64,000 bases of DNA from positions 141,045-205,044 of IMG/VR virus record IMGVR_UViG_3300042305_001773. The stretch is one strand, 5' to 3'. Of the stretch, positions 340 through 62,484 are shown in pieces; position 1 is the stretch's first letter; every line of letters begins with the position of its first letter. The notes under the pieces were generated by a model. It was not told where the DNA came from. It saw only the letters and a program-made list of their open reading frames with translations, and searched no databases. Position numbers and translations under genes: made by a program.

Positions 340-669
340 TCACCGGCAGCAGCGGCAGCCGCGGCAGCTGCGGCAAGCGCGGACGGCGCGAACCGGAGCG
401 GCTACAACCTGCACCGGGACTTCTACCACGGCGCGGGTCACGGTGCGAGTCTTCTCGATCGTCCGCCCGAAAAGCCCCTCGCGGCACGAGCTGCGGCACG
501 AGCTTTCCGTGCAGCAGGTGCCGTTGGCGCAAGCCGTGGCGGGGGCAGCGGCGATTACGGCCGCGGCCTCCGGGGCCTGCTTCAGCACGCTCTGCGGCTC
601 ACCGGCATCGCCAGCGAGAACGACGGACGAAACGAACGCAAGAACAACCGCTGCAACACAAGACTTCAT
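340..669 (-). CDS. secreted Cys-rich small protein
   Basis: Signal-peptide-like N-terminus (MKSCVAAVVLAFVSSVVLA), 10 Cys in the mature part, AAGGAG SD. Confidence 0.75.
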   Translation of the reverse strand: MKSCVAAVVLAFVSSVVLAGDAGEPQSVLKQAPEAAAVIAAAPATACANGTCCTESSCRSSCREGLFGRTIEKTRTVTRAVVEVPVQVVAAPVRAVRACRSCRGCRCCR

Positions 670-719
670 GTCAATCTCCTTGAACTACCGAACAAATACT
701 CCGACACGCGTCGGTGTAA

Positions 720-766
720 CCTGCTCAGCTGTACTATCTGTATAGCTGAGCGGGATTTGATTGCAA
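720..766 (-). promoter_or_regulatory. sigma70-like promoter (TTGCAA-N16-TATACA) overlapped by an inverted repeat
   Basis: -35 at 766..761, -10 at 744..739; perfect 8-bp arms at 723-730 and 744-751 with a 13-nt spacer. Confidence 0.55.
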
Positions 767-815
767 CCCCAAAAATCAACATAGATTATGGGGAGTTTTG
801 GCAAAATGCGTAACG

Positions 816-7474: not shown

Positions 7475-7837
7475 TTATTTGCTGCTTCGGTAGTTGTCCG
7501 GCACGTTGCCGTCTTTGGTGCGAAGTACGCCGGCGTTTAGTTCTGGCCACTTTTCTAGCGAATGAATAGCGCCGATGACATTCCACGCCGCGTGCCCCAG
7601 ATGGTCTTCGCTGCGGTCGCCGTTCAAAAAATTATAGATGTGCGCGATCGCGTGATTCAGCAGGTCAGAGACGGGCATGCCGTTTTCCCAGTTGTATGGG
7701 CCAAATTTTTCAGCCCCTTCGTGGTAGGTCTGCGCGAGCGCCCGCAGACCGATCGGCGAAATTAGATCGTAACGCACGGCGTCACAATCAGCGCTGCGTA
7801 CCGCGCCAGTGTCGTACTCGTGACGTTCGTTACTCAT
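7475..7837 (-). CDS. dATP/dGTP diphosphohydrolase domain protein (DUF5664-like)
   Basis: TGAVRS...RYDLI.P..L..LA..Y..GAEK....NW..G ... H...H ... EDHL.HAAWN. Confidence 0.85.
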   Translation of the reverse strand: MSNERHEYDTGAVRSADCDAVRYDLISPIGLRALAQTYHEGAEKFGPYNWENGMPVSDLLNHAIAHIYNFLNGDRSEDHLGHAAWNVIGAIHSLEKWPELNAGVLRTKDGNVPDNYRSSK

Positions 7838-8882: not shown

Positions 8883-9061
8883 CGCCGTCTTCGTTTGTGT
8901 GTTGTTGATGTGGTGCCGCGTACAAAGCACGCGCCACTATAGATCGCCGCGCCCGCCACCACGAGCCCGGCAACGCCAATTTGCGGTATTGCGCAGATTC
9001 CGGCAAGAAGCATAAGCGCAGCGTAACCGGAAAACGTGGCGTGAGGATCTGGTTGTGACAT
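8879..9061 (-). CDS. small membrane protein with basic C-terminus
   Basis: Two hydrophobic stretches then HKRRRR; TAATG overlap with the upstream gene. Confidence 0.55.
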   Translation of the reverse strand: MSQPDPHATFSGYAALMLLAGICAIPQIGVAGLVVAGAAIYSGACFVRGTTSTTHKRRRR

Positions 9062-9285
9062 TAGGGTGCCTGACTGTCGCCGTGCGGCCACACCTGTGTT
9101 CGAGTTGTGTCCGGCGCGGCTGGGTTAAATTGATATTGCGGTAGCGGCAACGGCGCCTCAAGTTTAAGATGGTTTACTGCGTTATCAGGGAAATAGAGTT
9201 GCGGGCCGGGGCCGCGACGCGTGCCCTCGACGTAGTGCTGTTTTCGTTCCTGATACAATTTTGCGGAGCGTCCGACGTTTGCCAT
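9061..9285 (-). CDS. hypothetical protein
   Basis: GGAGG SD 4 nt before the ATG. Confidence 0.65.
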   Translation of the reverse strand: MANVGRSAKLYQERKQHYVEGTRRGPGPQLYFPDNAVNHLKLEAPLPLPQYQFNPAAPDTTRTQVWPHGDSQAP

Positions 9286-9302
9286 ATAACCTCCAGAAAG
9301 TA

Positions 9303-9337
9303 CGTGGCCGGGTCACCGTTTAGTATACCCGGCCGCG
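9303..9337 (-). promoter_or_regulatory. TATACT -10 element framed by an inverted repeat
   Basis: Arms GGCCGGGT (9306-9313) and ACCCGGCC (9327-9334), 13-nt spacer, -10 at 9327..9322, about 30 nt upstream of an SD-bearing gene. Confidence 0.5.
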
Positions 9338-9506
9338 CAGCTATCACTTGCGAGTCGTTTCTTTGGCGGCGGCCGCTGCAACCTGACACATGTAACCGAG
9401 TACATTTGCCAGTCCAGCAAGACCGTATATGAAAACATGCCCAGTGTATTTGAGGCTGTCTTCAACCCATTGAAATTCAGACTCGCTACCGTTGTTATTG
9501 TGGTTC

Positions 9507-11423
9507 ATGGATAAACCTGATCAAACAGTTACTGAAGCAGTTGACATGCCTTCCGTAGGCGTGCAATCACTTCTACAAGAATTAATCTCGATCGACGTGA
9601 CGGATGTGCATTCTGTTCACGCGCGTGCCGCTGTTTTGCAGCAGCTCGCGGGTCGGCATGCTTTCCCGTCGCTCGAACCTATTTTGCCTTTGGTTCTGAA
9701 CCTTAATGGACGCCCGTACAGCATTCAGAATCATATGCCTTTTTCCCCACTTTTCCGGCTACTGACGCCGAAAAATCAAGTGTGGTGCACGGGGCGTCAG
9801 GTATCAAAATCGACCAGCCTAGCAGCGCACGGAGTTGTAGTTGCCAACTCTATCCCGTTCTTCAAAACGTTATTCATCACACCGTTGTACGAACAGATAC
9901 GCCGGTTCTCGAATAACTATGTGCGTCCGTTTATCGATCAGTCTCCTGTGAAGTCGCAATGGAGCGGCACGACGACCGAGAATTCAGTTCTGCAAAGATC
10001 TTTTAAAAACAACTCAATGATGTTGTTTAGCTTTGCGCTTTTAGATTCGGATCGTGTGCGTGGTGTTTCTGCAGACCGCGTGTGCATCGACGAAGTTCAG
10101 GACATGGATCCTGATCACGTGCCGATCATTCAAGAAACGATGTCTTACTCCAAATGGGCGACGAGTTATTACACAGGAACGCCGAAGACGCTAGATAACT
10201 TAATTTACGGATTGTATAAACGATCATCACAGGCCGAATGGTTTATACCTTGTCATTCATGCAAGCACTGGAGCATCCCTTCGCTTGAGTATGACTTAGA
10301 TAAAATGATCGGCCCATACAGCATTCATATCAGCGAGAACTATCCGGGCACCGTCTGCGCTAAATGTCAGAAACCGATCAGCCCAAGGCATGGTCGGTGG
10401 GTGCATAGATATCCCGAACGCCGCTGGCAATTTGCCGGGTATCACGTACCGCAGATGATACTACCGCTTCATTTCTCCGACCCTGAAAAGTGGTCAACTC
10501 TATTGTTGAAGAGGGAAGGCTTTGGGAATATGACCCAAGCGCAGTTCTACAACGAGGTAATGGGAGAAAGCGTTGATACCGGTCAGAAGCTCATCAGCGA
10601 AACTGATTTGAAGGCTGCGTGCGTGCTAGACTGGGAAAACAAGAAAGAACCAGACCCTAAGTGCTTTGCAAATCTCTCGAACTACAAACATCGCATCCTT
10701 GCGGTCGACTGGGGCGGTGGCGGAGAAGCAGGTATTAGTTTCACCGTGCTTACTGTGCTGGGGTTCCGCCCAGATGGGACCATCGACACGCTGTGGGCCA
10801 AGCGCCTGCTTATTGGCGGCGATCATTTGGCCGAAGCGGTTGAATGTATGCGCTGGTCTAACTTGTTTAATTGCGATTTTGTCGCTCACGATTACACGGG
10901 CGCCGGCACGGTCCGCGAAACGGTCATGGTGCAGGCTGGGTTTAATCTAGAGCGAGTCTTGGCGATGCGACTTGTTCGTTCCGCGTCGCAAGATTTGATG
11001 GTGTTCAAACCGCCGACAGAGATCAATCATCGAGCGCACTATAGCCTCGACAAAACGCGGTCGTTGCTGTACACGTGTCAGGCGATCAAGCTGAAGCAAG
11101 TCCGCTTCTTCCAGTATGACTGGGCGTCGCAGGACTCGCCGGGCTTGGTGTCGGACTTTCTTGCGCTGGTAGAAAGTAAAGCCGAGTCTAGACTAGGCGG
11201 CGATATTTATACCATTACAAGGAACACGTTGTTGACTGACGACTTTGCGCAAGCTGTTAACCTAGGCTGCGCCGCTCTTTGGCACGTGAATAACGCGTGG
11301 CCTAATTTCGCGGAGATAGCTGGCGTAGCCCGGTTAAGCGAGCGTGTTGTTAAGGCAGAGACGCCGATGGATGACGACTGGGCGGATGATTCCATCGGGC
11401 GAAACTACTTTGGCGGGTATTAA
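9507..11423 (+). CDS. terL: terminase large subunit, GpA-like
   Basis: Walker A GRQVSKST, Walker B RVCIDEVQD, coupling motif TGTP, CxxC...CxxC Zn lid, RuvC-like AVDWGGG; start uncertain (9492, 9507 or 9546). Confidence 0.9.
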   Translation: MDKPDQTVTEAVDMPSVGVQSLLQELISIDVTDVHSVHARAAVLQQLAGRHAFPSLEPILPLVLNLNGRPYSIQNHMPFSPLFRLLTPKNQVWCTGRQVSKSTSLAAHGVVVANSIPFFKTLFITPLYEQIRRFSNNYVRPFIDQSPVKSQWSGTTTENSVLQRSFKNNSMMLFSFALLDSDRVRGVSADRVCIDEVQDMDPDHVPIIQETMSYSKWATSYYTGTPKTLDNLIYGLYKRSSQAEWFIPCHSCKHWSIPSLEYDLDKMIGPYSIHISENYPGTVCAKCQKPISPRHGRWVHRYPERRWQFAGYHVPQMILPLHFSDPEKWSTLLLKREGFGNMTQAQFYNEVMGESVDTGQKLISETDLKAACVLDWENKKEPDPKCFANLSNYKHRILAVDWGGGGEAGISFTVLTVLGFRPDGTIDTLWAKRLLIGGDHLAEAVECMRWSNLFNCDFVAHDYTGAGTVRETVMVQAGFNLERVLAMRLVRSASQDLMVFKPPTEINHRAHYSLDKTRSLLYTCQAIKLKQVRFFQYDWASQDSPGLVSDFLALVESKAESRLGGDIYTITRNTLLTDDFAQAVNLGCAALWHVNNAWPNFAEIAGVARLSERVVKAETPMDDDWADDSIGRNYFGGY

Positions 11424-11746
11424 AAAATCCGCCAGCAGTAGTCCTCGATAAATTTTTTCATCGCCGCGTAATCTCTAATCTTGGCGGTTTCAATAACGTC
11501 AACGACGGCACAAGCCGCGGTATACAGCGCGGTCGCCGCTTCCGTACAATCCATTGAGGAGTCATACAACTCCCAATTAGCGCCAGAGCGCGGCACGGCT
11601 GGTTCCTTGCCTTCAAACGCGTCGGCGACGATTCGCTGAAATACGCCATCTGGTTCGGTATCCATCGCGCCAAACGAGCGATACTTTTCTTGAACTTTTT
11701 CGAATCTACGAATCGCTTCTTTGAGCGTCGTCACGGCAAGTGTCAT
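11420..11746 (-). CDS. hypothetical protein
   Basis: ORF converging on terL; start uncertain. Confidence 0.6.
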   Translation of the reverse strand: MTLAVTTLKEAIRRFEKVQEKYRSFGAMDTEPDGVFQRIVADAFEGKEPAVPRSGANWELYDSSMDCTEAATALYTAACAVVDVIETAKIRDYAAMKKFIEDYCWRIF

Positions 11747-12188
11747 CGGATTTACCGCCGGCGTTGACAATCTCCATACCCTTTTCAGTTATCGAGAAAT
11801 TGAAATCGTTTTTTTCGCAGTCATACTCAGCGTCTAGCAAACCACGCTGTACGCCGACACGCATAATGTTCGATATGACACGAGCACCGAGCGCGCGAAA
11901 TAACCGAAGCATCTTTTCTTTGTACTCTTCAAACGAGTTTGCGCCGATGCCGTACGCGCCGTCTGTTTGAATATCTGACAGGTCGCGTACAATTTGCTCG
12001 ACCTCCCATATCTCCAAGAATTGACGCTGGTAGTCCAGATCGCATTCGGCTTCAGTCGGCTTTTCGTTTTGCATCTTTGCGATAAAGCCAGCAAACATCA
12101 TAAGCACGTGATCGCGCAAATCTTCAATCGATCCGCAAATGCGGCGAGACGGCTGCTCGTCGTTTTCGTCTTCGTAGTCTTCGAACAT
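11706..12188 (-). CDS. hypothetical protein
   Basis: GAGG SD before the ATG at 12188. Confidence 0.65.
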   Translation of the reverse strand: MFEDYEDENDEQPSRRICGSIEDLRDHVLMMFAGFIAKMQNEKPTEAECDLDYQRQFLEIWEVEQIVRDLSDIQTDGAYGIGANSFEEYKEKMLRLFRALGARVISNIMRVGVQRGLLDAEYDCEKNDFNFSITEKGMEIVNAGGKSDDTCRDDAQRSDS

Positions 12189-12195
12189 GTTTACC

Positions 12196-12510
12196 TCAGA
12201 CAGCCTCGGCGGCAAGGCGGGCCGTCGCTAGTGCGGCGTCGTAGTTGCCGCGCGCAATCATACGCGCGTGGGCCGCATCGCGGCACTGACCTAGATAGTC
12301 CGAGTAGGCGGCGTCTGTGTTGACCAGCGCTTCGGCCGAGCTGAAGCTGTGCGGTTTGCTGGTCAGCGGATTGTCGCCGCTACGCATGATCCGCTCAACG
12401 GCGGACATCTTGACCGAGATCCGGTTGTCTTCCAATTCCGACTCGCGCCGGACAGCGTCCGCGAGGGCGGAGGCGGCAGCAGTAATGTTATCAGCAAAGT
12501 TCTTCGACAT
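12196..12510 (-). CDS. hypothetical helical protein
   Basis: AAGGAG SD before the ATG at 12510. Confidence 0.65.
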   Translation of the reverse strand: MSKNFADNITAAASALADAVRRESELEDNRISVKMSAVERIMRSGDNPLTSKPHSFSSAEALVNTDAAYSDYLGQCRDAAHARMIARGNYDAALATARLAAEAV

Positions 12511-13033: not shown

Positions 13034-13356
13034 TACATAAGTCCTATGTCGCGCAAGACGCCGTACTGCATAGCCAGCCGTTCCTGCGCTGTGTGTTTCA
13101 TACGCCCGTGCGCTGATTGAGACACGTCAAGCGAACTGGCCGCGCGCCATTTTGCTAGGTCTAAACGTTTGCGTAATTTCAACGGGTTTTTGTCGTCAGT
13201 ATTTCCGTGCTGCAATCCGCGGCGGAAACTGGCTTCTGAAATGCGCGCTATTAGCCGCACTAACTTTTTTTTCGTCGCGGCTGGTAGATTATCAAACTCT
13301 TGTCGCCGCAAACCGTTTGCGACCGACATGCGAGAAAAATCCGTTTTTGTTTTCAT
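13033..13356 (-). CDS. hypothetical basic protein
   Basis: 107-aa ORF, coupled to its neighbours; SEASFRRG.QHG motif. Confidence 0.6.
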   Translation of the reverse strand: MKTKTDFSRMSVANGLRRQEFDNLPAATKKKLVRLIARISEASFRRGLQHGNTDDKNPLKLRKRLDLAKWRAASSLDVSQSAHGRMKHTAQERLAMQYGVLRDIGLM

Positions 13357-13360
13357 TACC

Positions 13361-13804
13361 TTAAGCTTCGCAGTAAATAACTACTTTGCAACCGCATTGC
13401 TCGGCTAATTTGATAACGTCGGGCGAGTACACCGACACGATCTGGTCGCGTTTAACCGCGCCAGCTGTGATCAGCGCCTGCAGCCCGAGCTTAGCGATAC
13501 CGCGTCGCCGGTATTCTGGGTCTACAAAACATTCGATTGTTTGCGCTGTAACCGCGCGACCTTTGAACTTCTCTGGCCACGGGCGCGAACCAACCCAGCC
13601 TACTAACGTCTCGTCAAACCAGACAAGGGCCATAGCCATTTCCGGGTGCGGCTGCTCGTGGTTAACGTGCAGATACCGCTTAGCGAGTTCTTTTCGAATT
13701 GAGCTGTCGCTACCCGAATCCGGCCACGACAACCTTGTCATAATGGCCGTCACATCGACCAGTCCAAGCCGGTTGATGTCTTTGATTTTGATAGAAATAT
13801 CCAT
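13361..13804 (-). CDS. GNAT family N-acetyltransferase
   Basis: Acetyl-CoA motif A FVDPEYRRRGIAK; CGGAGG SD before the ATG at 13804. Confidence 0.8.
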   Translation of the reverse strand: MDISIKIKDINRLGLVDVTAIMTRLSWPDSGSDSSIRKELAKRYLHVNHEQPHPEMAMALVWFDETLVGWVGSRPWPEKFKGRAVTAQTIECFVDPEYRRRGIAKLGLQALITAGAVKRDQIVSVYSPDVIKLAEQCGCKVVIYCEA

Positions 13805-13839
13805 GCCGCGTCCTCCGAGACACAGCATGAAGTATACAA

Positions 13840-13912
13840 AGCCGGCGGTCGGATTCGAACCGACGACAGGCAGTTTACAAAACTGCTACTCTACCAACTG
13901 AGTTACGCCGGC
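13840..13912 (-). tRNA. trnT: tRNA-Thr (anticodon UGU), CCA not encoded
   Basis: Full cloverleaf: acceptor GCCGGCG/CGCCGGC, D arm ACTC-AGTTGGTA-GAGT, anticodon arm GCAGT-TTTGTAA-ACTGC, T arm GTCGG-TTCGAAT-CCGAC. Confidence 0.95.
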
Positions 13913-13917
13913 AAATA

Positions 13918-14385
13918 TCAAACAAGTTCAGTGATTAAACCAGTTGGCCAGTAGTATGGCATGTCGATTGGCTCCTGCCAACCAAACCGCGAATAGTGGC
14001 GGAAATCTTTGCGGAGAAGATTGCTGCGGTGGCTCGCGTGAAATTGCTCGTCACCAATCCACGGCGGATATACGTTGCGCTCAATAGTGTCGCGCAGTGT
14101 GGTATAGCTGCCCATGAACTGCGGGCAGAGCGTGTCGTTAAATCCGCGGCGTATCCATTCGCGGCACACGACTATGGCGTATACAGCTAGCGCAGTTTCA
14201 TATCCAACCCACATGCGGACGGCGGGGTGATTGCGCCAACTACTTGTCCCGGGTTCGTGCTCACCAACCGGGACGCCGAGACATAATAAGATCTGTTTAC
14301 ATTCAACCCGTTGTTTGCCGAGCCTTTTGTTATCAAGGCAGGCAGCCGAGTGTTTGAATCTCGGCAGGGGTAAGAATGTCTGCAT
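13918..14385 (-). CDS. pyrimidine dimer DNA glycosylase / MSMEG_6728-like protein
   Basis: MQTFLP...SA..LD.KRLGKQRVE..Q, W.NHPA..MW.GY, H.SH.SNLL.KD. Confidence 0.85.
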   Translation of the reverse strand: MQTFLPLPRFKHSAACLDNKRLGKQRVECKQILLCLGVPVGEHEPGTSSWRNHPAVRMWVGYETALAVYAIVVCREWIRRGFNDTLCPQFMGSYTTLRDTIERNVYPPWIGDEQFHASHRSNLLRKDFRHYSRFGWQEPIDMPYYWPTGLITELV

Positions 14386-14389
14386 TTAA

Positions 14390-14704
14390 TCAATCGTCAA
14401 ACTCGTCGTCAAAATCTTCTTCGTATTCTGGATCATTGTCTTCTTCGTCCTCGTACTCTTCGTCCCACTCTTCGTCATCGTCGCCCCATTCTTCTTCCTC
14501 TTCTTCATCATCATCGTCGTCATCGTCGTCTGTGAATACGTAATTCGGCTTGGGAATGGCTATGTCGCTATCGTCATCGTCATCGTCGTCGTCGTTTACA
14601 AACTGCCACTCTTCTTCGATGAAATCGTCGTCGAGACCGTCGTCATGGCGGCCGGCGCGTTCGTTGGGCATGTCGCGAAACAACGGAGATTCAAAGTAGC
14701 GCAT
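14390..14704 (-). CDS. extremely acidic low-complexity protein
   Basis: About 57 of 104 residues are D/E, interspersed with W/Y/F; tightly packed between flanking genes. Confidence 0.7.
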   Translation of the reverse strand: MRYFESPLFRDMPNERAGRHDDGLDDDFIEEEWQFVNDDDDDDDDSDIAIPKPNYVFTDDDDDDDDEEEEEEWGDDDEEWDEEYEDEEDNDPEYEEDFDDEFDD

Positions 14705-14706
14705 AG

Positions 14707-17340
14707 TTATCCAATGTCCCGGGCAAGGTCAGCTGCAGGTAACAAATATTGATCGCACCAACTGCTGTCAACAAGAATACCCGGCAGGTTGCGCACCGCT
14801 TCCTCTCCGCCGAAAACTCCGCGACGCGTCAATAGTTTAACAAGCCAGAGCCAGTTTGGGGCTAGTGCTTTTCTATCGTAAAAGTAGCGATTGACCGCAC
14901 GCTGGTTCAACCACCAATGCGTTTTTTTACGCACAATGTAGTTATTGGGCTGGCCGACCTTTCTTGCCCGCGGCAATACAGCTAACGCGCCGGTTTGAAC
15001 AGCGGTTGTTAACTCTGCAAAAAACGACAAATCAGCTTCGTTTTGCGTGATTAAATGTTTGCAGGCGTAGTCGAGCTGGAATGCGCTGCCATACGTTTCT
15101 TGCAGCCAGTCGTGCAGGTCGGTAAGCACGGCTAATGCGGTCACCGGATTTGTCAGGCTAATGCGCATACGTTGACGCATCGCACGCTGAATATAGCCGG
15201 GCAAAATATACGCCAGCGGCGCAAAATCAGTTTTAAGCGGCGCCGCACCGCAAATAATCTGCCAGCCATACATTGGCGCAATTGCCGCAGCCGTATGCGC
15301 CAGATGTACAAGCACGGGCCGGTTATGGCAGCGCGGTATCGTCAGACTCAGGCTGGTCGCGTCGAATACGCTAGCAACAGTTGTCGGCCACGCTAACTCC
15401 GCTGTGCGAGAGTACACTGCAGCGCTTGCGGACGCCCGGTGCAAAATATCAATACGCTGATGCGGGCAGCCAAGGACAGTCGCGATTTGTTGCGCGACGG
15501 CAAAGCTGTCGCCTGTAAAACCAGTGGCTACAGGATCGCGCCGCAAGATCGGGTCTACAAGATCCGCGATAATGGTTGCCGCAACAGTCCAGACAAATGC
15601 GTTCTCTTGGCTAGGCGTTAAGAACTGGCGGATGGCCGGCGGGGCAACTGCCACCGGTTCAGGGAATATGGCATGTTTGTTTTTTTCGCTTGGCTGGTTT
15701 GGCGCTGATGGCGCGCCGTCAGCGGCTAGCTCGTAGTTTGCAAAACGAAATACGCTTGCGCGGTCATCCCAACCCAACCTGTTGGAGACGCACACCAGTT
15801 CTGGTTTACTCAAACCGATGGCGAGCAAATGGCTTCTGCTGTTCCACCGACTGTCGTACAGCATCACTTTTTTGTGTGACGCCACTACGCCAGCTGCATA
15901 CGCCAGCAGCCCAGCCCGTTCGATTTTAAACGCGTTGTCGGCAAAATTGATTTCTTCGCCGTTGAGATAGATTGTACCGGCGTATGTTTTTTCGCCGTCG
16001 TCGGCTTGCGTGATCTTACTGATAACAATGTTCGCGTCGCAGATGTGGTGATTTGTAACGCTCCACCAGCCGTCAGCCTTTGGAATAACGGTATGTCGCC
16101 ACGGCTGGGGCGCGGTTGGGGTAATGTGCTTGGACGTCTTGACGTGTGTTAACACTCGATCTGAAAAGCCGGGAGAAAAGTTACTACCAATTTTGTTTAA
16201 GAACGGCACTAACTTGTCTGGCGGTATTGTGAGCCGCGTCGCAAACGAGTGCGCCGCGATTTCATTCATCTGGCCAAGCGCGTTGCTCAGCCGGCTTTGC
16301 CACGTCTCGGCATTTCTACGAATTGAGACTAGCCGCGTCATTGCGTCTGTAGCCAGCCTGTTTTTTACGCGCTGGTTTTGCGCGACGATAGCGACGTAGC
16401 CACGGGCGTTGGCTGTACGGCTGATTAGTTCCGGCGACACTAAATGACTCTGAAAGATTCGCGGGACTGGCGCAAATGAACACCAGCTACCGCCCCAGCT
16501 ATTTGCCTCGACACCTGTATAACTCGCCATGACAGGCAGCAACGACTGCCCGCGGCGCAACATTTCACACTGCATACTCAGCGCCCACATCGGATCGTCT
16601 ACGACGAATTGCGTGCTCTTTAGCGGTTCGGCGGCGGGAAGAAGTGCCGTACGCAATAAGAAGTAACCGGCTTCTGGGCGACTGCGCTTGTACTGGTTTA
16701 GCGAGATAAAGTTTTGCTTGGCCATAAACTGCTCGTCGTACTGCACGACCAGAAAGCCGGTTATACGCCCGGGTAGGTCATAATACGGGAACACAAGGCT
16801 GGCGCCGTTTTCGCGCACGGGGCTAATAAGCGGCCGGCGCACAAAGCGTTGGAGTGTGTCTATCTGTTCTTTGTACGCCACACCGACAAGTCCGGCAGCG
16901 TCTATTTCTGGATATACACCAAGCTCGCGCAAGCGGCAGGCAATAACGTCGTCGTGGTGTCCCCAAATTTGCGCTTCGGCGTCAAACCAGAACTGCTCAA
17001 ATTTTTCAAAGCGTTCAATTGCCCGGGCGTACTCGACGACCGCATTATCTTTTTCGGCCGGGTTTATAGCGTTTAACTCGATAAAACGGGCGATCGCTAC
17101 ATCCGGGCTTGTATTCCATAATGCCGCGCCAAACGTTATGATATCTCCATGGGCCGAGCACGAATTACAGTGCAGCCAAATACCGTTAGTGCTTGCGTCG
17201 TCGAACAGGTGTAGCGTATTTTTTTGACATAGCGGACAACTGACGACAGCCGGGAAAACCAACTGGTCCGGCGCAATGCCCAACGCCGACAGGGCAATCG
17301 CGTGGTGTTGGCGGCCAATTAAACAGGTAGGAAATCCCAT
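14707..17340 (-). CDS. degenerate primase-helicase-like protein (Zn ribbon, DnaG-like core, DUF927-like C-terminus)
   Basis: CPLC...HCNSC; VFPYYDLPGRITGF; VVDDPMWAL in place of TOPRIM EG..D; LGWDD...F; GFTGDSF in place of Walker A. Confidence 0.55.
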   Translation of the reverse strand: MGFPTCLIGRQHHAIALSALGIAPDQLVFPAVVSCPLCQKNTLHLFDDASTNGIWLHCNSCSAHGDIITFGAALWNTSPDVAIARFIELNAINPAEKDNAVVEYARAIERFEKFEQFWFDAEAQIWGHHDDVIACRLRELGVYPEIDAAGLVGVAYKEQIDTLQRFVRRPLISPVRENGASLVFPYYDLPGRITGFLVVQYDEQFMAKQNFISLNQYKRSRPEAGYFLLRTALLPAAEPLKSTQFVVDDPMWALSMQCEMLRRGQSLLPVMASYTGVEANSWGGSWCSFAPVPRIFQSHLVSPELISRTANARGYVAIVAQNQRVKNRLATDAMTRLVSIRRNAETWQSRLSNALGQMNEIAAHSFATRLTIPPDKLVPFLNKIGSNFSPGFSDRVLTHVKTSKHITPTAPQPWRHTVIPKADGWWSVTNHHICDANIVISKITQADDGEKTYAGTIYLNGEEINFADNAFKIERAGLLAYAAGVVASHKKVMLYDSRWNSRSHLLAIGLSKPELVCVSNRLGWDDRASVFRFANYELAADGAPSAPNQPSEKNKHAIFPEPVAVAPPAIRQFLTPSQENAFVWTVAATIIADLVDPILRRDPVATGFTGDSFAVAQQIATVLGCPHQRIDILHRASASAAVYSRTAELAWPTTVASVFDATSLSLTIPRCHNRPVLVHLAHTAAAIAPMYGWQIICGAAPLKTDFAPLAYILPGYIQRAMRQRMRISLTNPVTALAVLTDLHDWLQETYGSAFQLDYACKHLITQNEADLSFFAELTTAVQTGALAVLPRARKVGQPNNYIVRKKTHWWLNQRAVNRYFYDRKALAPNWLWLVKLLTRRGVFGGEEAVRNLPGILVDSSWCDQYLLPAADLARDIG

Positions 17341-18520
17341 GACAAATATCCCGCTCGATCAAGCGCACGACGTCAGTGGCCGCGAAACCCACAGGCTGAC
17401 TACCCTGTATCCGCAACCTGACTTTGTAAAAAATGCCGCGCACGAAAAACTAAGCAGTGCCGCGGATTTACCACGCCATCTATACGCTGATCAGCGCCAT
17501 AAACTTTATCCGTGCCATACTGCCCCTGCAACATGGATGTCGGCGCTTTTCTTTGCTGACAAGCAAGCGCAGTTCGACGCCAAGGAGGCAGCGGCTATTC
17601 AATCTAAGATACACCAAGCCGCCGAGTATTTTGGTATTCGCGGGGCTGTGGCGGAACTAGAAGAGAAGATTGCGGCCAGCTCGGCGCAGGATATTAACAG
17701 TTTGCCGGACTCGGAGTTCGCCATCGTGTGGGTCAGCGAGGTGGGCGGTAAAGAGCGCCACTGGCCGCTGCGGAACGCCGAGGAAGTCAAGTTCGCTGCG
17801 GCGCATTTTAAGACATTCCGCGACAACTTTGTGTTCGACGACCGGCACGTGATCGCCACCAAGATCCTCGAAAAGGCCGCGCAATACGGCGCCGACGTTT
17901 CGGGCGCTGAGGGCTCGCTAGAGCTGGCGGCTGGTCTGGGTGCGTGCGCCGCCAAGGTCGCGAGCGACATGATCAAAGACCGCGTAGGGCTCACCCGCCG
18001 GCAGCATTCGCAGCTGGCAGGCGAGTTGTCCAAGTTAGCCGAGGTTATCGACCAGAACCCTGAAAGGGCTCGTACGGTCGAGATGCGGCTAAAGTTGGCG
18101 AGCGCGGTCGATAATTTCGATAGAAGCACCAACCTCTATCGCCTGTACGACGCCGGCGGCCTACCGCGGCCGGAAGAAGTCCTGTTTGCCATTACTGAAA
18201 AGGTGGCGCGCGACTTTTTAGATAGCAATGTCGAAACCACCACCGGCAACGTCTACGCCCTCACTGATTTAGAGAAACTAGCGGTTGAAGACGTACGCGA
18301 GTGGCTTGGCGACGACTTTGCAGACGCGGTAAGTGCCGGCGGCGTATACATGGACCGCGACAAGCTGGCGGCGATTGTGCCCACGCTTGACCGTGGCATG
18401 GCTACCATGCTGGACCGGCTCATGCAGGACAAGTCTGCTGCGCCGGTTGTGAAGTCAGCGTCGGCGGCCAGTAACCTTCTTTCGCTTGCTCGCCTGCACG
18501 AGCTTGCGGCTGGCGGTTGA
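17339..18520 (+). CDS. probable virion/head protein with two DUF6582-like repeats
   Basis: LP...(Y/F)A.....R.(Y/W)P......A..F ... I..AA.(F/Y)G occurs twice; AGGA SD before the ATG at 17339. Confidence 0.65.
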   Translation: MTNIPLDQAHDVSGRETHRLTTLYPQPDFVKNAAHEKLSSAADLPRHLYADQRHKLYPCHTAPATWMSALFFADKQAQFDAKEAAAIQSKIHQAAEYFGIRGAVAELEEKIAASSAQDINSLPDSEFAIVWVSEVGGKERHWPLRNAEEVKFAAAHFKTFRDNFVFDDRHVIATKILEKAAQYGADVSGAEGSLELAAGLGACAAKVASDMIKDRVGLTRRQHSQLAGELSKLAEVIDQNPERARTVEMRLKLASAVDNFDRSTNLYRLYDAGGLPRPEEVLFAITEKVARDFLDSNVETTTGNVYALTDLEKLAVEDVREWLGDDFADAVSAGGVYMDRDKLAAIVPTLDRGMATMLDRLMQDKSAAPVVKSASAASNLLSLARLHELAAGG

Positions 18521-23839: not shown

Positions 23840-24739
23840 CTACGACTGCGCAGCGGCTTTGACAGCCGCGCGGAGGGTCGCGTTGGTTTGTAGTTCCGCA
23901 ATAAGCTGAGTAAGCGTTAACTCGCCTTGCGGCCCTGTTGGCCCTGTAGCGCCCATATTGCCGCAGGGGCCGGTTGCACCCGCCTCTCCGACGCCTGTGG
24001 CTCCTGTCGCGCCACGCGGCCCTGACGGGCCTGTTATGCCGCGAGGGCCTGTGGCGCCCTGCGGACCCGTCGAGCCTGTGTCGCCTTTAGCGCCGCGGGT
24101 GCCAGCCGGCCCGGACTGCCCCTGTGGACCCTGTGCGCCTTGTGGGCCGGCCGTACCTTGTGGGCCCATTAAACCCTGCGGCCCAATTAAGCCCTGCGGC
24201 CCCGGCGAGCCTTGCTGCCCGCGGTCTCCCTTTGGTCCGGTTGCCCCGCGTGGCCCGGTGGCTCCTGTGGCGCCCGTAGCGCCTGTAGAGCCGCGCGCGC
24301 CGTTTGTGCCGTTTATACCCGCCGGGCCAGTAGGGCCGGTGGCGCCTCTGGGACCGGTCGGGCCAGTGGGGCCGGTTGGCCCGGTTGGTCCCGTGGGGCC
24401 AGACGGACCGGTAGGGCCAGTAGCGCCAGTGGTTCCTTTTGGCCCGGTCGCGCCTGTTATGCCAGAAACGCCTGTCGAGCCGCGCGGACCTGTTGCGCCT
24501 ATTTTGCCTGTCGGACCCGTTAAACCTGTCGGGCCTTTGTCGCCTTTGATTCCTTGCGCCCCCTGCGGTCCAGCGGGGCCTCTGGCGCCGGCGGGACCTT
24601 GCGGCCCAATAGGCCCGGGGTTTCCTTGCGGGCCTTGCGGTCCGGCAGGGCACACACCGCAGCCACCGCCGCCCTGCGCCATTGTCGTACCGTCATACGG
24701 CACAAACTCGATTTCGTCGTTGTTGTCAGTGTCTGCCAT
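23840..24739 (-). CDS. collagen-like fibre protein (~80 Gly-X-Y triplets)
   Basis: Continuous GPQ/GAT/GPT triplets, CGVC N-cap, short helical C-terminus. Confidence 0.9.
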
Positions 24740-24741
24740 GT

Positions 24742-30498
<5,757 letters not shown>

Positions 30499-42521: not shown

Positions 42522-43343
42522 TTAAAAATTGCCTTGCGTATATTGTTTGTCGAGCATTGCCTGAATCTTGGCGGCGCGCTGACTTACAGCGCCGGGCGTG
42601 ATGTTTAATCGTCGCGCAATTTCTTGTGTGCTGGTTTTTCTTCGTCCGTTGCGGCCAAGTGTCATATCCGCAATTAACTTGTCGACCGGACCAAGATCTT
42701 CATAGACAAAGTTAAACCACGCGTCGGCGGATCGATTGCTGTTTGGAATCGTGCTCGCGACATCACCGCCGTAGCTTTCTTCGTCGGTGACTTCGCGCGT
42801 TGTCATGCCCTCTGATACCGGCTGGTTAAACGCGCGGATTTTCTGAATACGGCGTTTTGACAGCCCGGTGTGATCCGCCAGCTCGTCGTCCGTAGGGTCA
42901 CGACCTAGCTGGTCGTACAGCTCGGATTCGCTCTCCGTTAGCCGTCCGTAATCGAGGCCGACCTGCTCAGGAATCGAGATGATGTTTTGCGCCTGCGCAG
43001 ACACGCGGCGCAAACTCTGCAACTGCGACAGCAAGTGTGTGCGCACGTTACCGCGCTGCGGGTCGTATGTATCCAACGCTTTGAGCGCCATAAGCCGCGC
43101 CTTGGAGCGGGTTGTCGGGCTGGCGTTTTGGCCGGCGTAACTCATCACGGCCGTGTCGATAACCGGCTGAAGCGTCCCCAGCAGCGCCGTATTCGTTTCC
43201 GGCGTTTTAGTGCGCTGCCATTGCGCATAAGCGTTGTCAAAGTCGGTGCTGACGCCAGTCGGCATTCGGGCCGAGAACGGCGCGGGCACGTCGCCTAAAA
43301 TAGACGGCATGCCGGCTGGCGTACTGGTTTTGTTATCAGCCAT
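42522..43343 (-). CDS. RNA polymerase sigma-70 family factor (regions 2, 3, 4)
   Basis: AL.TYDPQRG (region 2), LGRDPTDDELA.HTGLS (region 3), T.EIARRLNITPGAVSQR (region 4 HTH); start moved to the ATG at 43343. Confidence 0.85.
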   Translation of the reverse strand: MADNKTSTPAGMPSILGDVPAPFSARMPTGVSTDFDNAYAQWQRTKTPETNTALLGTLQPVIDTAVMSYAGQNASPTTRSKARLMALKALDTYDPQRGNVRTHLLSQLQSLRRVSAQAQNIISIPEQVGLDYGRLTESESELYDQLGRDPTDDELADHTGLSKRRIQKIRAFNQPVSEGMTTREVTDEESYGGDVASTIPNSNRSADAWFNFVYEDLGPVDKLIADMTLGRNGRRKTSTQEIARRLNITPGAVSQRAAKIQAMLDKQYTQGNF

Positions 43344-43345
43344 GA

Positions 43346-44953
43346 TTATGCCTTCTTGAGTGGGCCGCCGGGCCATTTAATGCTATCTTTGTACAGCGGC
43401 GCGTACGTCTGTGAAATAAGTGTCGTGTCTTCGTCTTCTTCTTCGGTGCGGATGTATGACAGCGCAAACGACGTACCAGCCAACGCACGTTCGGCGTTGA
43501 TGGCGTACGACACCTGCGTGACGGCTGCGATCATTGCGCCGTCTGATTGAATTTCTGAGTCTGGTAGCTCAATTCTAACAATACTACCCGGGGCAATATC
43601 GAACCGCAGTTTGCCCGATAGTTCTCCGTAGCGCTGGCTCAAAAACTCGGTTTTGTAAAAGTGCTCTGCAAAACGTTTACTCACGCCGTCCGCCATTCCG
43701 GTCGCGACGTCCGCCGGCAATAACCACTCTGGCGGCGGGTCACCCTCGCCGGTCGCGGGCGCAATGCAGTCGCCGGGACGCTTTCCTTTTACGCCGGTTG
43801 TTGCGCCCGTAAAAATGGGCCATGGCGACATATTTGTCAGCCACGCGGGCAAGTCTTTAAACAGCTTCAACCCGGGACGTTCTTCTCCGGGTTTAAACGG
43901 GTACTGCCCGGCGGGCTGGGTGTATACGTCTGCCATACGAACTTGCCCGCCGGCCGACAACATCGGGTCCATTTGTTGCGGCCAAAACACGACCACGCTG
44001 TCAATGAGCTGGCTCATAGACGCGTTAAAGTTGGCGTAGCTGTATTCATCGCCTTTGATGACGTACTTTTTATTACCGTCATGTTTGAGGCCGCCAAAAA
44101 ACGGAACCACGTATGCGTGCTCGATTGCTGGCGACACGGCAAAGAAAAACTGCGACGCGTACTCGCCAACAAGCTTTCCCCAGAACGACGTGTACGCAAA
44201 CGACTCTAACGCGTCTTTTGTTAGCGCCGTTCGCACCGACATTTCAATGTTGTTGCCGTTTAAGCCGTCAAGGTTCAAAGCGAGCTTGGCGTTACCCGGC
44301 GCAACGGGCATGCGTTTCAGCGCTTTTATTGCTGCTTCGTTTGGGCGTGATTGCGGTAATTTATATTCAGCCATTTTGTTGAAGATCGGCTTGATAACCT
44401 CGCCCCACAAATCGCGCGAGATTTTGTCTTTGCGGATTAGATCGCCGTTGGCGTCAATAATCGGAACGCTGGAGTGCGCGTTACCTTCAGTCTGCAGCGC
44501 CACAAAGGCTGCGTTTGTGGCCATAAGGAACGGCGCGTTTTGAAACCACTTGCCGTTGAGGGCTGACGAGTTGTTCAAGTCGTCGAGCCAATGGATGAGT
44601 TGCAGCACGTAATTAGCGCTGTTGTGTGAGCGTTGATACCCGATGCCGGCAAGCATGCCTTCAAATATCACAAACCGGCCGTTCTCCATTTTGTCTTTCT
44701 GCCCGGCTTCAGGGATAATTCTGAGCCAGACAGTCACAGGATCGCGCGGTTTGATTTGTTTACGTAGTTTATGAATCGTCGCTTCGCGCGTTTTGCCGGA
44801 CGCCGCGTCGTAACCTACTGCGACTGTAAGCGACGCAGTTGGAATACTGTTCAACCCAAATGTGGCAGAGATAGCAACAATGTCGTCAAACACGGTGTCT
44901 TTGATCTTGGCCGTGATTTCAAACTTCGAGTAAACGTACGGCTGTTTAGCCAT
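43346..44953 (-). CDS. baseplate hub protein (gp27/gpD-like)
   Basis: Position; C-terminal GKLRFDIAPGS.V.I ... V.QVS..I pattern. Confidence 0.65.
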   Translation of the reverse strand: MAKQPYVYSKFEITAKIKDTVFDDIVAISATFGLNSIPTASLTVAVGYDAASGKTREATIHKLRKQIKPRDPVTVWLRIIPEAGQKDKMENGRFVIFEGMLAGIGYQRSHNSANYVLQLIHWLDDLNNSSALNGKWFQNAPFLMATNAAFVALQTEGNAHSSVPIIDANGDLIRKDKISRDLWGEVIKPIFNKMAEYKLPQSRPNEAAIKALKRMPVAPGNAKLALNLDGLNGNNIEMSVRTALTKDALESFAYTSFWGKLVGEYASQFFFAVSPAIEHAYVVPFFGGLKHDGNKKYVIKGDEYSYANFNASMSQLIDSVVVFWPQQMDPMLSAGGQVRMADVYTQPAGQYPFKPGEERPGLKLFKDLPAWLTNMSPWPIFTGATTGVKGKRPGDCIAPATGEGDPPPEWLLPADVATGMADGVSKRFAEHFYKTEFLSQRYGELSGKLRFDIAPGSIVRIELPDSEIQSDGAMIAAVTQVSYAINAERALAGTSFALSYIRTEEEDEDTTLISQTYAPLYKDSIKWPGGPLKKA

Positions 44954-62454: not shown

Positions 62455-62484
62455 GTAAGCCTCCGTGTTACACCGTAAGTATAC

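What the first reader, a model, noticed from the sequence alone, without database searches (positions are those of the whole stretch)
720..766. Promoter whose inverted repeat frames the -11..+2 melting region (site 1 of 2)
Seen: plus strand CC-T-GCTCAGCT-[13 nt]-AGCTGAGC-G-GG. On the minus strand the upstream arm ends on the first T of the -10 hexamer TATACA, so the 13-nt spacer runs from -11 to +2. Known: that is the span melted in a sigma70 open complex. Site 2 (9303-9337) has the same layout (2 bp, template-strand T.G, 8 bp, 13-nt loop, same -10 register) but unrelated arm sequences. If these -10s are used, the predicted start sites fall inside the loop, so the hairpin could not form in the mRNA. 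The different arms argue against one shared repressor. Inference: a structure-specific cruciform or template-hairpin promoter class, loosely analogous to N4 virion-RNAP hairpin promoters but with a different loop size, perhaps read by the phage sigma factor.
Basis: partly seen in the sequence, partly recalled or inferred. Interest (0 to 1): 0.7.

Follow-up and report, generated by a model that had tools for sequence, protein, structure and literature searches.

The report
RNA hairpins overlapping phage promoter boxes
The two inverted repeats are real and conserved across a family of about 200-kb freshwater phages, but they behave as RNA stem-loops on the messenger strand that carry a promoter-like TATAC box, not as a DNA cruciform promoter.

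Summary
Two are in register with TATAC, against none in 200 shuffled genomes. The phage is a novel 205-kb lake-water myovirus.

Site 2 lies next to the terminase large-subunit gene. It has orthologues in 63 distinct relatives. These share an invariant GTATACT, while the arm sequences vary completely (47 different 5' arms) yet stay complementary.

Selection acts on the sense strand, not on a duplex. G.U pairs outnumber A.C by 116 to 22, and the sense RNA fold is more stable in 55 of 63 sequences. The supposed 13-nt loop closes in RNA to a tetraloop at site 2 and a 5-nt loop at site 1.

The element is single-copy per genome. Two other promoters in the same phages use the same hexamer without any framing repeat, and there the hexamer drifts TATACT/TATAAT/TAAAAT. 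So TATACT is plausibly a real -10 box, and the phage does encode a sigma-like protein and its own beta/beta' RNA polymerase. The repeat itself is best read as an intercistronic RNA hairpin that overlaps that box. Its exact role is not settled, and no RNA data were available. This is a new conserved RNA motif of moderate interest.

The parts
720..754 (-). Site 1 stem-loop: a 15-position stem with a 5-nt apical loop at 735-739.
   Evidence: In 7 relatives 91% of cells are paired against 41% or less when the partner is slid, and 4 pairs change on both sides.
739..744 (-). Invariant TATACA in the 5' apical strand of site 1. It is a possible -10 hexamer but lacks the -7 T.
   Evidence: Invariant in the 7 sequences of alignment A2.
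761..766 (-). TTGCAA box 16 nt upstream of TATACA; -35-like.
   Evidence: Conserved in six of the seven aligned sequences (TTGATT in L094); all of these are close relatives.
767..793 (-). AU-rich covarying hairpin upstream of site 1, in the same intergenic region.
   Evidence: Read by eye from the sequences printed.
701..714 (-). Second small hairpin downstream of site 1. The loop (A/G)CGCGTG is conserved and the stems covary.
340..669 (-). Gene downstream of site 1: 109 aa with a hydrophobic, signal-peptide-like N-terminus and a Cys-rich tail. Ribosome-binding site AAGGAG.
9299..9341 (-). Site 2 stem-loop. The core arms are 9303-9313 and 9327-9337. In RNA the outer stem is followed by a bulged A (9326), an inner stem UACU (9325-9322) with GGUG (9317-9314), and an AAAC loop (9321-9318).
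9322..9328 (-). GTATACT: TATACT is invariant in the 42 aligned orthologues, with G preceding it in 41 of 42. It is both a -10-type hexamer and the 5' strand of the apical stem.
   Evidence: The same hexamer serves as a drifting -10 box at other loci.
9344..9508 (-). Conserved 54-aa gene (E-L/F-Q-W-L/V-E-D motif) ending 6 nt before the hairpin core. It is the likely source of read-through RNA.
9061..9285 (-). Gene downstream of site 2: a conserved 74-aa Pro-rich protein (MxxxGRSAKLYQER...), function unknown.
9507..11423 (+). Terminase large subunit, transcribed divergently. Its ATG overlaps the ATG of the 54-aa gene.
62478..62484 (-). GTATACT after an intrinsic terminator, 23 nt before the start codon of the 330-aa gene. 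A comparison promoter with no framing repeat.
13831..13837 (-). GTATACT just after tRNA-Thr, 26 nt before the start codon of the GNAT acetyltransferase gene. A comparison promoter with no framing repeat.
42522..43376 (-). Sigma-like 284-aa protein, a possible reader of the TATACT boxes.
   Evidence: Sigma70_r3 at 38 bits, above the cut-off, plus a region-4-like helix-turn-helix. Region 2 was not detected.

Best explanation
The inverted repeats are the two strands of RNA stem-loops that form in minus-strand (sense) transcripts.

At site 2 the hairpin fills the short gap between a conserved 54-aa gene and a conserved 74-aa gene, next to the divergently transcribed terminase gene. It has four parts: an outer stem of free sequence, a bulged A, a 4-bp apical stem (UACU paired with RGUR), and a variable tetraloop.

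The 5' apical strand, GUAUACU, is frozen because it carries two constraints. It must pair in the RNA, and in the DNA it is the phage's -10-type promoter hexamer TATACT.

The proposed working is as follows. Transcripts reading through from the upstream gene fold the hairpin, which marks the cistron boundary. It could act as a 3'-end or processing and stability structure, or as a protein-binding operator. Transcripts started at the embedded box carry only the 3' arm.

Site 1 is a second element with a similar build: an outer covarying stem, a UAUAC/GUR apical stem and a 5-nt loop. It lies in the 5' region of a gene for a small secreted-looking, Cys-rich protein.

What is shown: conservation, covariation, sense-strand asymmetry, and -10-like behaviour of the hexamer at other loci. 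What is inferred: read-through transcription, use of the embedded box as a promoter, and the downstream effect of the hairpin.
For: Site 2 covariation:
- 42 orthologues align without gaps. 82.5% of cells are paired against 36-47% in slid controls.
- 129 cells change on both sides, against 52 in shuffles (0 of 500 shuffles reached the observed value).
- 12 of 17 pairs change on both sides.

Strand asymmetry:
- Pair classes are 473 Watson-Crick, 116 sense G.U and 22 A.C. The apical stem has 57 G.U and 0 A.C.
- A scoring scheme that penalises G.T and A.C equally still gives 58 against 21.
- Over 63 distinct orthologues the sense RNA is more stable in 55, by a mean of 5.0 kcal/mol (Wilcoxon p = 9e-9). 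There are 47 different 8-nt arm sequences.

Separability of hairpin and box:
- A distant relative (L080, terminase 51% identical) keeps the same architecture with apical stem UGCU/GGCG. That is a compensatory A-U to G-C change that destroys TATACT. It carries a separate TTTGT-TATGCT box downstream.

Copy number:
- One copy in this genome and one in each of five complete relatives.
- One copy per fetched locus in the relatives, always between the small gene and the 74-aa gene.

Site 1:
- 91% of cells paired against 41% or less when slid, with 4 pairs changed on both sides.

The hexamer as a -10 box elsewhere:
- TATACT, TATAAT, TATATT and TAAAAT interchange at a fixed distance from the start codon, after a terminator or a tRNA gene.
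- At site 2 the hexamer never drifts (42 of 42), as expected under an added pairing constraint.
- The phage encodes a sigma-like protein and its own beta/beta' RNA polymerase.
Against: - No RNA run could be listed, so there is no direct evidence that the region is transcribed through, or where transcripts start.
- No U tract follows the hairpin (mean 1.9 U in 8 nt), so it is not a canonical terminator.
- Predicted accessibility of the ribosome-binding site is the same with and without the 5' arm (0.38 against 0.39), so no simple translational switch is evident.
- The window's own site 1 copy folds better on the plus strand (-27.8 against -18.5 kcal/mol). The site 1 family shows only a weak sense preference.
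- Site 1 is not found by the site 2 covariance model, so the kinship of the two sites rests on a short shared apical motif.
- Sense-strand asymmetry would also fit a sense-strand single-stranded DNA hairpin.
- One relative (L215) keeps GTATACT but has lost the inner stem.
- The orthologues are related to one another, so the p-values overstate independence.
Confidence: 0.55

Rival explanations
1. The repeat forms a DNA cruciform or a template-strand hairpin that presents the -11..+2 region as single-stranded DNA to a phage sigma factor or RNA polymerase, making a structure-specific promoter class.
For: - The register with TATAC is beyond chance.
- TATACT behaves as a -10 box elsewhere.
- In the DNA fold of the plus (template) strand at site 2 the 13-nt spacer stays open.
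- The phage has its own sigma-like protein and beta/beta' polymerase.
- A jumbo-phage polymerase that reads single-stranded template-strand promoters is known: AR9 (review PMC7598289, read).
Against: - The asymmetry favours the sense (non-template) strand: 116 against 22, and 57 against 0 in the apical stem.
- The element is single-copy per genome.
- Sister promoters lack any framing repeat.
- L080 keeps the hairpin without the box.
- From general knowledge, a 13-nt spacer makes cruciform extrusion costly. The N4 hairpins have 3-nt loops (PMC4496689).
- In an open complex the two arms are each held in duplex DNA and cannot pair with one another (inference).
Confidence: 0.07
2. The RNA hairpin is an operator for a phage protein. 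This could be a translational repressor or a nut/boxB-like antitermination site. The protein would read the invariant GUAUACU strand and the bulged A. Sites 1 and 2 would be two targets of one factor.
For: - Seven invariant bases on one strand plus an invariant bulged A.
- Both sites share a UAUAC/GUR apical stem.
- There are two sites per genome, and both lie just upstream of a ribosome-binding site.
- The adjacent 74-aa protein is basic at its N-terminus and probably disordered.
Against: - The loop is variable, unlike boxB or coat-protein operators.
- The invariance is also explained by the -10 role of the hexamer.
- No RNA-binding domain was found in the neighbouring genes.
- The complex prediction was not run by the tool, so it gives no evidence either way.
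- L080 changes the supposed recognition strand.
Confidence: 0.2
3. The hairpin is a host RNase III (or other endonuclease) processing site, or a 3' stabiliser at an operon junction. The TATAC box would be incidental.
For: - The total duplex is 12-24 bp with a bulge and sits in an intercistronic position.
- There is no U tract.
- From memory, phage T7 pairs RNase III sites with promoters.
Against: - The phage encodes no RNase III.
- Stem length is very variable, with some orthologues at only about 11 bp.
- A processing role alone does not explain the invariant GUAUACU.
Confidence: 0.12
4. A DNA signal for the neighbouring terminase (a cos or pac site), or a sense-strand single-stranded DNA hairpin used in replication priming.
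For: - The element is single-copy and always lies next to the terminase large-subunit gene.
- Sense-strand asymmetry is compatible with folding of the lagging-strand template.
Against: - Arms that change freely are not what a sequence-reading terminase needs.
- Contig ends in relatives do not coincide with the element. In two relatives that have direct terminal repeats the element is internal.
- Site 1 lies 8.6 kb away from the terminase gene.
- U.G pairs close the apical stem on both sides, which is weak in DNA.
Confidence: 0.04

Closest known systems
Bacteriophage N4 virion-RNA-polymerase early promoters (hairpin promoters)
   Same: An inverted repeat with both conserved and free positions. 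Non-conserved stem bases are free as long as pairing is kept (PMC4496689).
   Different: The N4 hairpins have 5-7 bp stems and a 3-nt loop. They are extruded on the template strand, are read by a giant T7-like virion polymerase, and start transcription downstream of the hairpin. Here the stems are 11-20 bp, the asymmetry favours the non-template (sense) strand, no T7-like polymerase was found, and the box would place the start inside the hairpin.
Terminator-then-promoter junctions of this same phage group, for example upstream of the 330-aa gene
   Same: A hairpin at the end of one transcription unit, followed by G-TATACT about 25-40 nt before the next start codon. In relative L080 the site 2 hairpin and a TATGCT box are arranged the same way.
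   Different: At site 2 the box lies inside the hairpin's apical stem, and there is no U tract.
RNase III processing hairpins beside promoters in phage T7 (recalled from memory, not checked here)
   Same: Intercistronic, bulged hairpins of about 20 bp closely associated with promoters.
   Different: In T7 the hairpin lies downstream of the start site, so both kinds of transcript carry it. Here transcripts started at the box would lack the 5' arm.
Lambda nut/boxB sites and coat-protein operators (RNA hairpins read by a phage protein)
   Same: A small hairpin with an invariant bulged A and invariant bases. There are two sites per genome, and one lies just upstream of a small basic protein gene.
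   Different: Those systems read a conserved loop. Here the loop varies and the invariant bases sit in the stem. No boxA-like partner and no binding protein were identified.
Bidirectional -10 elements (TAnnnTA; Warman et al. 2021, as summarised in PMC10268837)
   Same: TATACTA at site 2 (A follows the hexamer in 33 of 42 orthologues) places -11A and -7T reciprocally on both strands. It sits between divergent genes (the terminase gene and the 74-aa operon).
   Different: The terminase start codon lies about 180 nt away, across the 54-aa gene. No start sites have been mapped.

Membership tests
N4-type hairpin promoter | Short hairpin (5-7 bp stem, 3-nt loop) centred near -11. | tested here: not met
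   Stems are 11-20 bp. The spacer is 13 nt in the template-strand DNA fold and closes to 4-5 nt in RNA. The N4 features are taken from PMC4496689.
N4-type hairpin promoter | The functional hairpin is on the template strand. | tested here: not met
   G.T-type pairs lie on the sense strand at 116 against 22. The antisense fold is weaker in 55 of 63 orthologues.
N4-type hairpin promoter | A cognate T7-like virion RNA polymerase is encoded. | tested here: inconclusive
   PF00940 gave no match in the genome, but the control genomes did not ring either. The largest open reading frames in the window carry no polymerase domain. The phage has a multisubunit beta/beta' enzyme instead.
N4-type hairpin promoter | Several copies in front of early genes. 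| tested here: not met
   One site-2-type element per genome in six genomes, plus one site-1-type element.
Sigma70-type -10 promoter | A TAnnnT hexamer with -11A and -7T at a plausible distance from the gene. | tested here: met
   Site 2: TATACT lies 37 nt before the ATG. The same box at two other loci drifts as TATAAT, TATATT and TAAAAT. Site 1 has TATACA, which lacks the -7 T.
Sigma70-type -10 promoter | A -35 element 16-18 nt upstream. | tested here: inconclusive
   Site 1 has TTGCAA at 16 nt, conserved in close relatives. Site 2 has none that is conserved.
Sigma70-type -10 promoter | A transcription start about 7 nt downstream of the hexamer. | not testable with these tools
   No RNA run could be listed.
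Intrinsic (Rho-independent) terminator | A stable hairpin followed directly by a U tract. | tested here: not met
   The hairpin is present, but the mean is 1.9 U in the 8 nt after the stem, which equals background.
Conserved cis-acting RNA stem-loop | Pairing maintained by compensatory changes, with G.U tolerated on one strand only. | tested here: met
   There was no Rfam match.
Conserved cis-acting RNA stem-loop | The element is present in a transcript. | not testable with these tools
   None was listed. It is inferred from the 54-aa gene ending 6 nt upstream.
Lambda nut/boxB-like antitermination site | A conserved loop read by an arginine-rich peptide, with a boxA partner. | tested here: not met
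   The loop is variable and no boxA-like block is conserved. Binding was not testable.
cos/pac packaging signal | Sequence-conserved duplex sites at or near the genome ends. | tested here: not met
   The arms are not sequence-conserved. The element is internal in two relatives that have terminal repeats.

The most novel reading that the evidence does not exclude
The same 7 nt are dual-coded. In DNA they are the -10 box read by the phage's own sigma-like factor and beta/beta' polymerase. In nucleic-acid hairpin form, either RNA from read-through or the displaced sense DNA strand, they are hidden or presented. Hairpin formation would then directly gate firing of the embedded promoter. This would be a structure-dependent promoter of a kind not described for multisubunit polymerases.
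Probability: 0.08. Interest if true: 0.85.

Novelty: new member of a known kind. Interest (0 to 1): 0.45.

Why it matters
- It defines a new, deeply conserved structured element with no Rfam match. There are 63 sequence variants across a whole family of uncultured freshwater phages of about 200 kb. The element sits at the junction between the terminase gene and a divergent operon.
- It shows a clear case of one short sequence under two constraints, a promoter hexamer and an RNA stem.
- Along the way, the analysis gave this phage group a comparative promoter hexamer and located its sigma-like factor and a fused beta-beta' RNA polymerase.
- It also gives a usable way to tell DNA-level from RNA-level selection on an inverted repeat without any experiment: count G.U against A.C.

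Tried and rejected
- **Near or distant DNA matches among deposited phages:** none. The closest protein hit is about 26% identical.
- **Rfam:** nothing relevant.
- **Covariance model of site 2 against the whole genome:** it finds only site 2. Site 1 is not recovered even with filters off, so 'same family' rests on a short motif only.
- **Third candidate at window 11524:** dropped. The region is conserved in distant relatives in the way coding DNA is.
- **Terminator reading:** rejected, because no U tract follows the hairpin.
- **Switch based on hiding the ribosome-binding site in read-through RNA:** rejected. Predicted accessibility is 0.38 against 0.39, p = 0.85.
- **Phage-encoded RNase III:** none.
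- **T7-like polymerase:** no hit, but the controls were silent too.
- **Sigma region 2:** no hit.
- **PurZ:** none.
- **RNA sequencing runs:** none was listed.
- **Complex prediction of the 74-aa protein with the hairpin RNA:** the tool did not fold it, so it gives no evidence either way.
- **Homologues of the 74-aa protein:** all hypothetical.
- **cos/pac reading:** rejected on contig ends and arm variability.

Full report
**Setting**

The window is the last 64 kb of a single 205,044-bp virus record with 55% G+C. IMG/VR classes the record as linear, and CheckV estimates it as complete. It comes from lake-water metagenomes.

About 97% of the genes lie on the minus strand. Nothing close exists among deposited phages. 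A tail-sheath-like protein is 26% identical to proteins of Vibrio and Salmonella myoviruses.

**The observation**

Both inverted repeats are exactly as described.

- Site 1 (720-754) lies between the stop codon of an 88-aa gene (816) and the ATG of a 109-aa gene (669).
- Site 2 (9303-9337) lies between the stop codon of a 54-aa gene (9344) and the ATG of a 74-aa gene (9285).

All four genes are on the minus strand. The 638-aa plus-strand gene that starts at 9507 is the terminase large subunit (Pfam GpA_ATPase).

Each hairpin folds much better than shuffled sequence, with z-scores from -4 to -7. Repeats with 8-bp arms and a 13-nt spacer are not rare in themselves: 9 were observed against 4.6 +/- 2.2 in shuffles. 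Two of them in register with TATAC, however, never occurred in 200 dinucleotide-preserving shuffles of the genome.

One caveat concerns the loop. The site 1 spacer pairs further, leaving a 5-nt loop. The site 2 spacer closes in RNA to a 4-bp stem with a tetraloop.

**Relatives**

The terminase protein recovered 78 related loci in IMG/VR, at 50-100% identity. A second scan with an alignment of the 74-aa protein added more. In total there are 63 distinct versions of the site 2 element. All lie in the same place, after the small gene and a few nucleotides before the ribosome-binding site of the 74-aa gene.

An ungapped alignment of 42 of them shows the following:

- TATACT is invariant.
- The G before it is nearly invariant (41 of 42).
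- A GT pair six and seven bases after the hexamer is invariant.
- The two positions flanking that GT are almost always purines.
- The loop between is variable (mostly AAAC).
- The flanking arms have essentially no sequence conservation.

The arms nevertheless stay complementary:

- 82.5% of cells form pairs, against 36-47% when the partner column is slid.
- 129 cells change on both sides, against 52 in column shuffles (0 of 500 shuffles reached the observed value).
- 12 of 17 pairs show double changes.

The alignment was anchored only on the hexamer and was not fitted to the structure.

**Which molecule folds**

The key test is strand asymmetry. A G.U pair on one strand is an A.C mismatch on the other.

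- In the named structure there are 473 Watson-Crick cells, 116 sense-strand G.U cells and only 22 A.C cells. In the apical stem the count is 57 to 0.
- A register search that penalises G.T and A.C equally gives 58 against 21.
- Folding every orthologue on both strands shows the sense RNA more stable in 55 of 63, by 5.0 kcal/mol on average.
- The purines flanking the invariant GT sit opposite invariant U. They switch only between G and A, which is the behaviour of U.G and U-A pairs.

A cruciform predicts no asymmetry. An N4-like template-strand hairpin predicts the opposite asymmetry. I therefore conclude that selection acts on a sense-strand fold, most simply the RNA. A sense-strand single-stranded DNA hairpin cannot be formally excluded. 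It is disfavoured because the apical stem would be closed by two G.T pairs.

**Is TATACT a promoter box?**

GTATACT occurs seven times on the minus strand. Five of these are intergenic and lie 30-63 nt before start codons. Two of the five could be followed in relatives.

- Upstream of the 330-aa gene, the box comes directly after an intrinsic terminator and reads GTATACT, TATAAT, TATATT or TACACT in different relatives.
- Upstream of a GNAT acetyltransferase gene, it comes directly after tRNA-Thr and reads TATACT, TATAAT or TAAAAT.

This is the drift expected of a sigma70-type -10 hexamer. Neither site is framed by a repeat.

At site 2 the hexamer never drifts (42 of 42), which fits a second constraint, namely pairing of A and C with the invariant U and G. 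Two outliers separate the two features. L080 keeps the whole architecture with a compensatory A-U to G-C change (UGCU/GGCG) that abolishes TATACT, and it has a TATGCT box further downstream. L215 keeps GTATACT but has lost the inner stem.

**Copy number**

A covariance model of site 2 finds one hit in this genome and one in each of five complete relatives. In the relatives' fetched loci it finds at most one hit each, all but one at the orthologous position. It does not find site 1, even with filters off. There is no class of such promoters.

**Site 1**

Seven relatives carry site 1.

- The stem is 15 positions with a 5-nt loop.
- 91% of cells are paired, against 41% or less when slid.
- Four pairs change on both sides.
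- TATACA and a TTGCAA box 16 nt upstream are conserved, but these are close relatives.
- The sense preference is weak (-19.3 against -16.6 kcal/mol). The window's own copy is the exception, at -18.5 against -27.8 kcal/mol.
- It shares with site 2 only the apical UAUAC/GUR motif and the general build.
- Two more covarying hairpins flank it.

**What the hairpin does**

This part is inference.

- It is not a canonical terminator, because no U tract follows it.
- Hiding of the ribosome-binding site does not differ between read-through and box-initiated RNA in predicted ensembles.
- The phage has no RNase III of its own.
- The 74-aa protein has no known domain, and the protein-RNA complex job was not folded.
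- No RNA run could be listed.

I therefore commit only to a boundary RNA stem-loop in read-through transcripts that overlaps an internal -10 box. Its most likely roles are as a 3'-end, processing or stability element, or as a protein operator.

**Who reads the box**

- The window encodes a 284-aa sigma-like protein, with Sigma70_r3 above the cut-off and a region-4-like helix-turn-helix.
- Outside the window, the genome encodes a 1467-aa fusion of beta with the N-terminal part of beta', and a 626-aa C-terminal part of beta'.
- Jumbo-phage polymerases are known to use short AT-rich boxes near -10. One of them reads the template strand as single-stranded DNA (PMC7598289). This keeps a small probability alive for a structure-dependent reading.

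**Comparison with the known**

- N4 hairpin promoters differ in stem and loop size, in the strand that folds, in the polymerase and in copy number (PMC4496689).
- The nearest analogue is the terminator-then-promoter junction of this same phage group, here compressed so that the box lies inside the stem.
- TATACTA also has the TAnnnTA form of bidirectional -10 elements (PMC10268837). This may bear on the divergent terminase gene, but it is untested.

**Verdict**

The DNA-structure promoter reading is not supported, while the -10 call is plausibly right. The element is a new conserved RNA stem-loop family of moderate interest.

Noticed in passing
Genome G000 13344-17747 (-) and 10484-12364 (-), outside the window (L151:3345-7748 and 485-2365): The phage encodes a multisubunit RNA polymerase. 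One 1467-aa protein carries Rpb2 domains 2, 3 and 6 followed by Rpb1 domain 2, so it is a fusion of beta with the N-terminal part of beta'. A separate 626-aa protein carries Rpb1 domain 5. The Pfam scores (172 and 87 bits) look unusually high for a jumbo-phage polymerase (my impression; not checked here).
   Followed up: partly
window 42522-43376 (-): A 284-aa sigma-like protein: Sigma70_r3 at 38 bits (above the cut-off) plus a region-4-like helix-turn-helix. Region 2 was not detected. It sits among baseplate and tail genes.
   Followed up: partly
window 9506-9509, with relatives: The terminase gene is one of very few plus-strand genes. Its ATG overlaps or abuts the ATG of the minus-strand 54-aa gene (CATG here, CATATG in most relatives), so each gene's translation signals lie inside the other gene. 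In the more distant relatives a covarying hairpin sits within the first ~50 nt of the terminase coding sequence (seen by eye in the printed sequences; not checked in the window).
   Followed up: partly
window 7475-7837 (-): An N-terminal domain of dATP/dGTP diphosphohydrolase (MazZ-like, as in 2-aminoadenine phages). No PurZ-like adenylosuccinate synthetase is present in the genome.
   Followed up: partly
window 22183; genome 95101, 62950, 53875, 55211 (minus strand): A second promoter-like two-block motif, CTAAAT - about 17 nt - (G)CATATT, recurs in intergenic regions.
   Followed up: no
genome 46814, 53875, 54529, 55211, 93294; window 21634: Terminator hairpin, then a T run, then TAGCTAT: six of the seven occurrences of TAGCTAT are intergenic. 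In two cases the motif lies only 15-17 nt before a start codon, so it is unlikely to be a -10 box.
   Followed up: no
window 13805-13833 (-): The 5' leader of the GNAT acetyltransferase gene forms an 11-bp hairpin that holds the ribosome-binding site in its loop and pairs the AUG. The arms covary among relatives. It starts 1-2 nt after the TATACT box.
   Followed up: partly
window 24742-29259 (-) and 23840-24739 (-): Two proteins with collagen triple-helix repeats (1505 aa and 299 aa), probably fibres.
   Followed up: no
window 11424-11705: My gene call left this stretch intergenic. It is conserved in distant relatives in the way coding DNA is, so it probably holds an uncalled minus-strand open reading frame.
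   Followed up: partly
window 340-669 (-): The gene after site 1 encodes a 109-aa protein with a hydrophobic, signal-peptide-like N-terminus and a Cys/Arg-rich tail. A strong hairpin follows it at 272-305.
   Followed up: no
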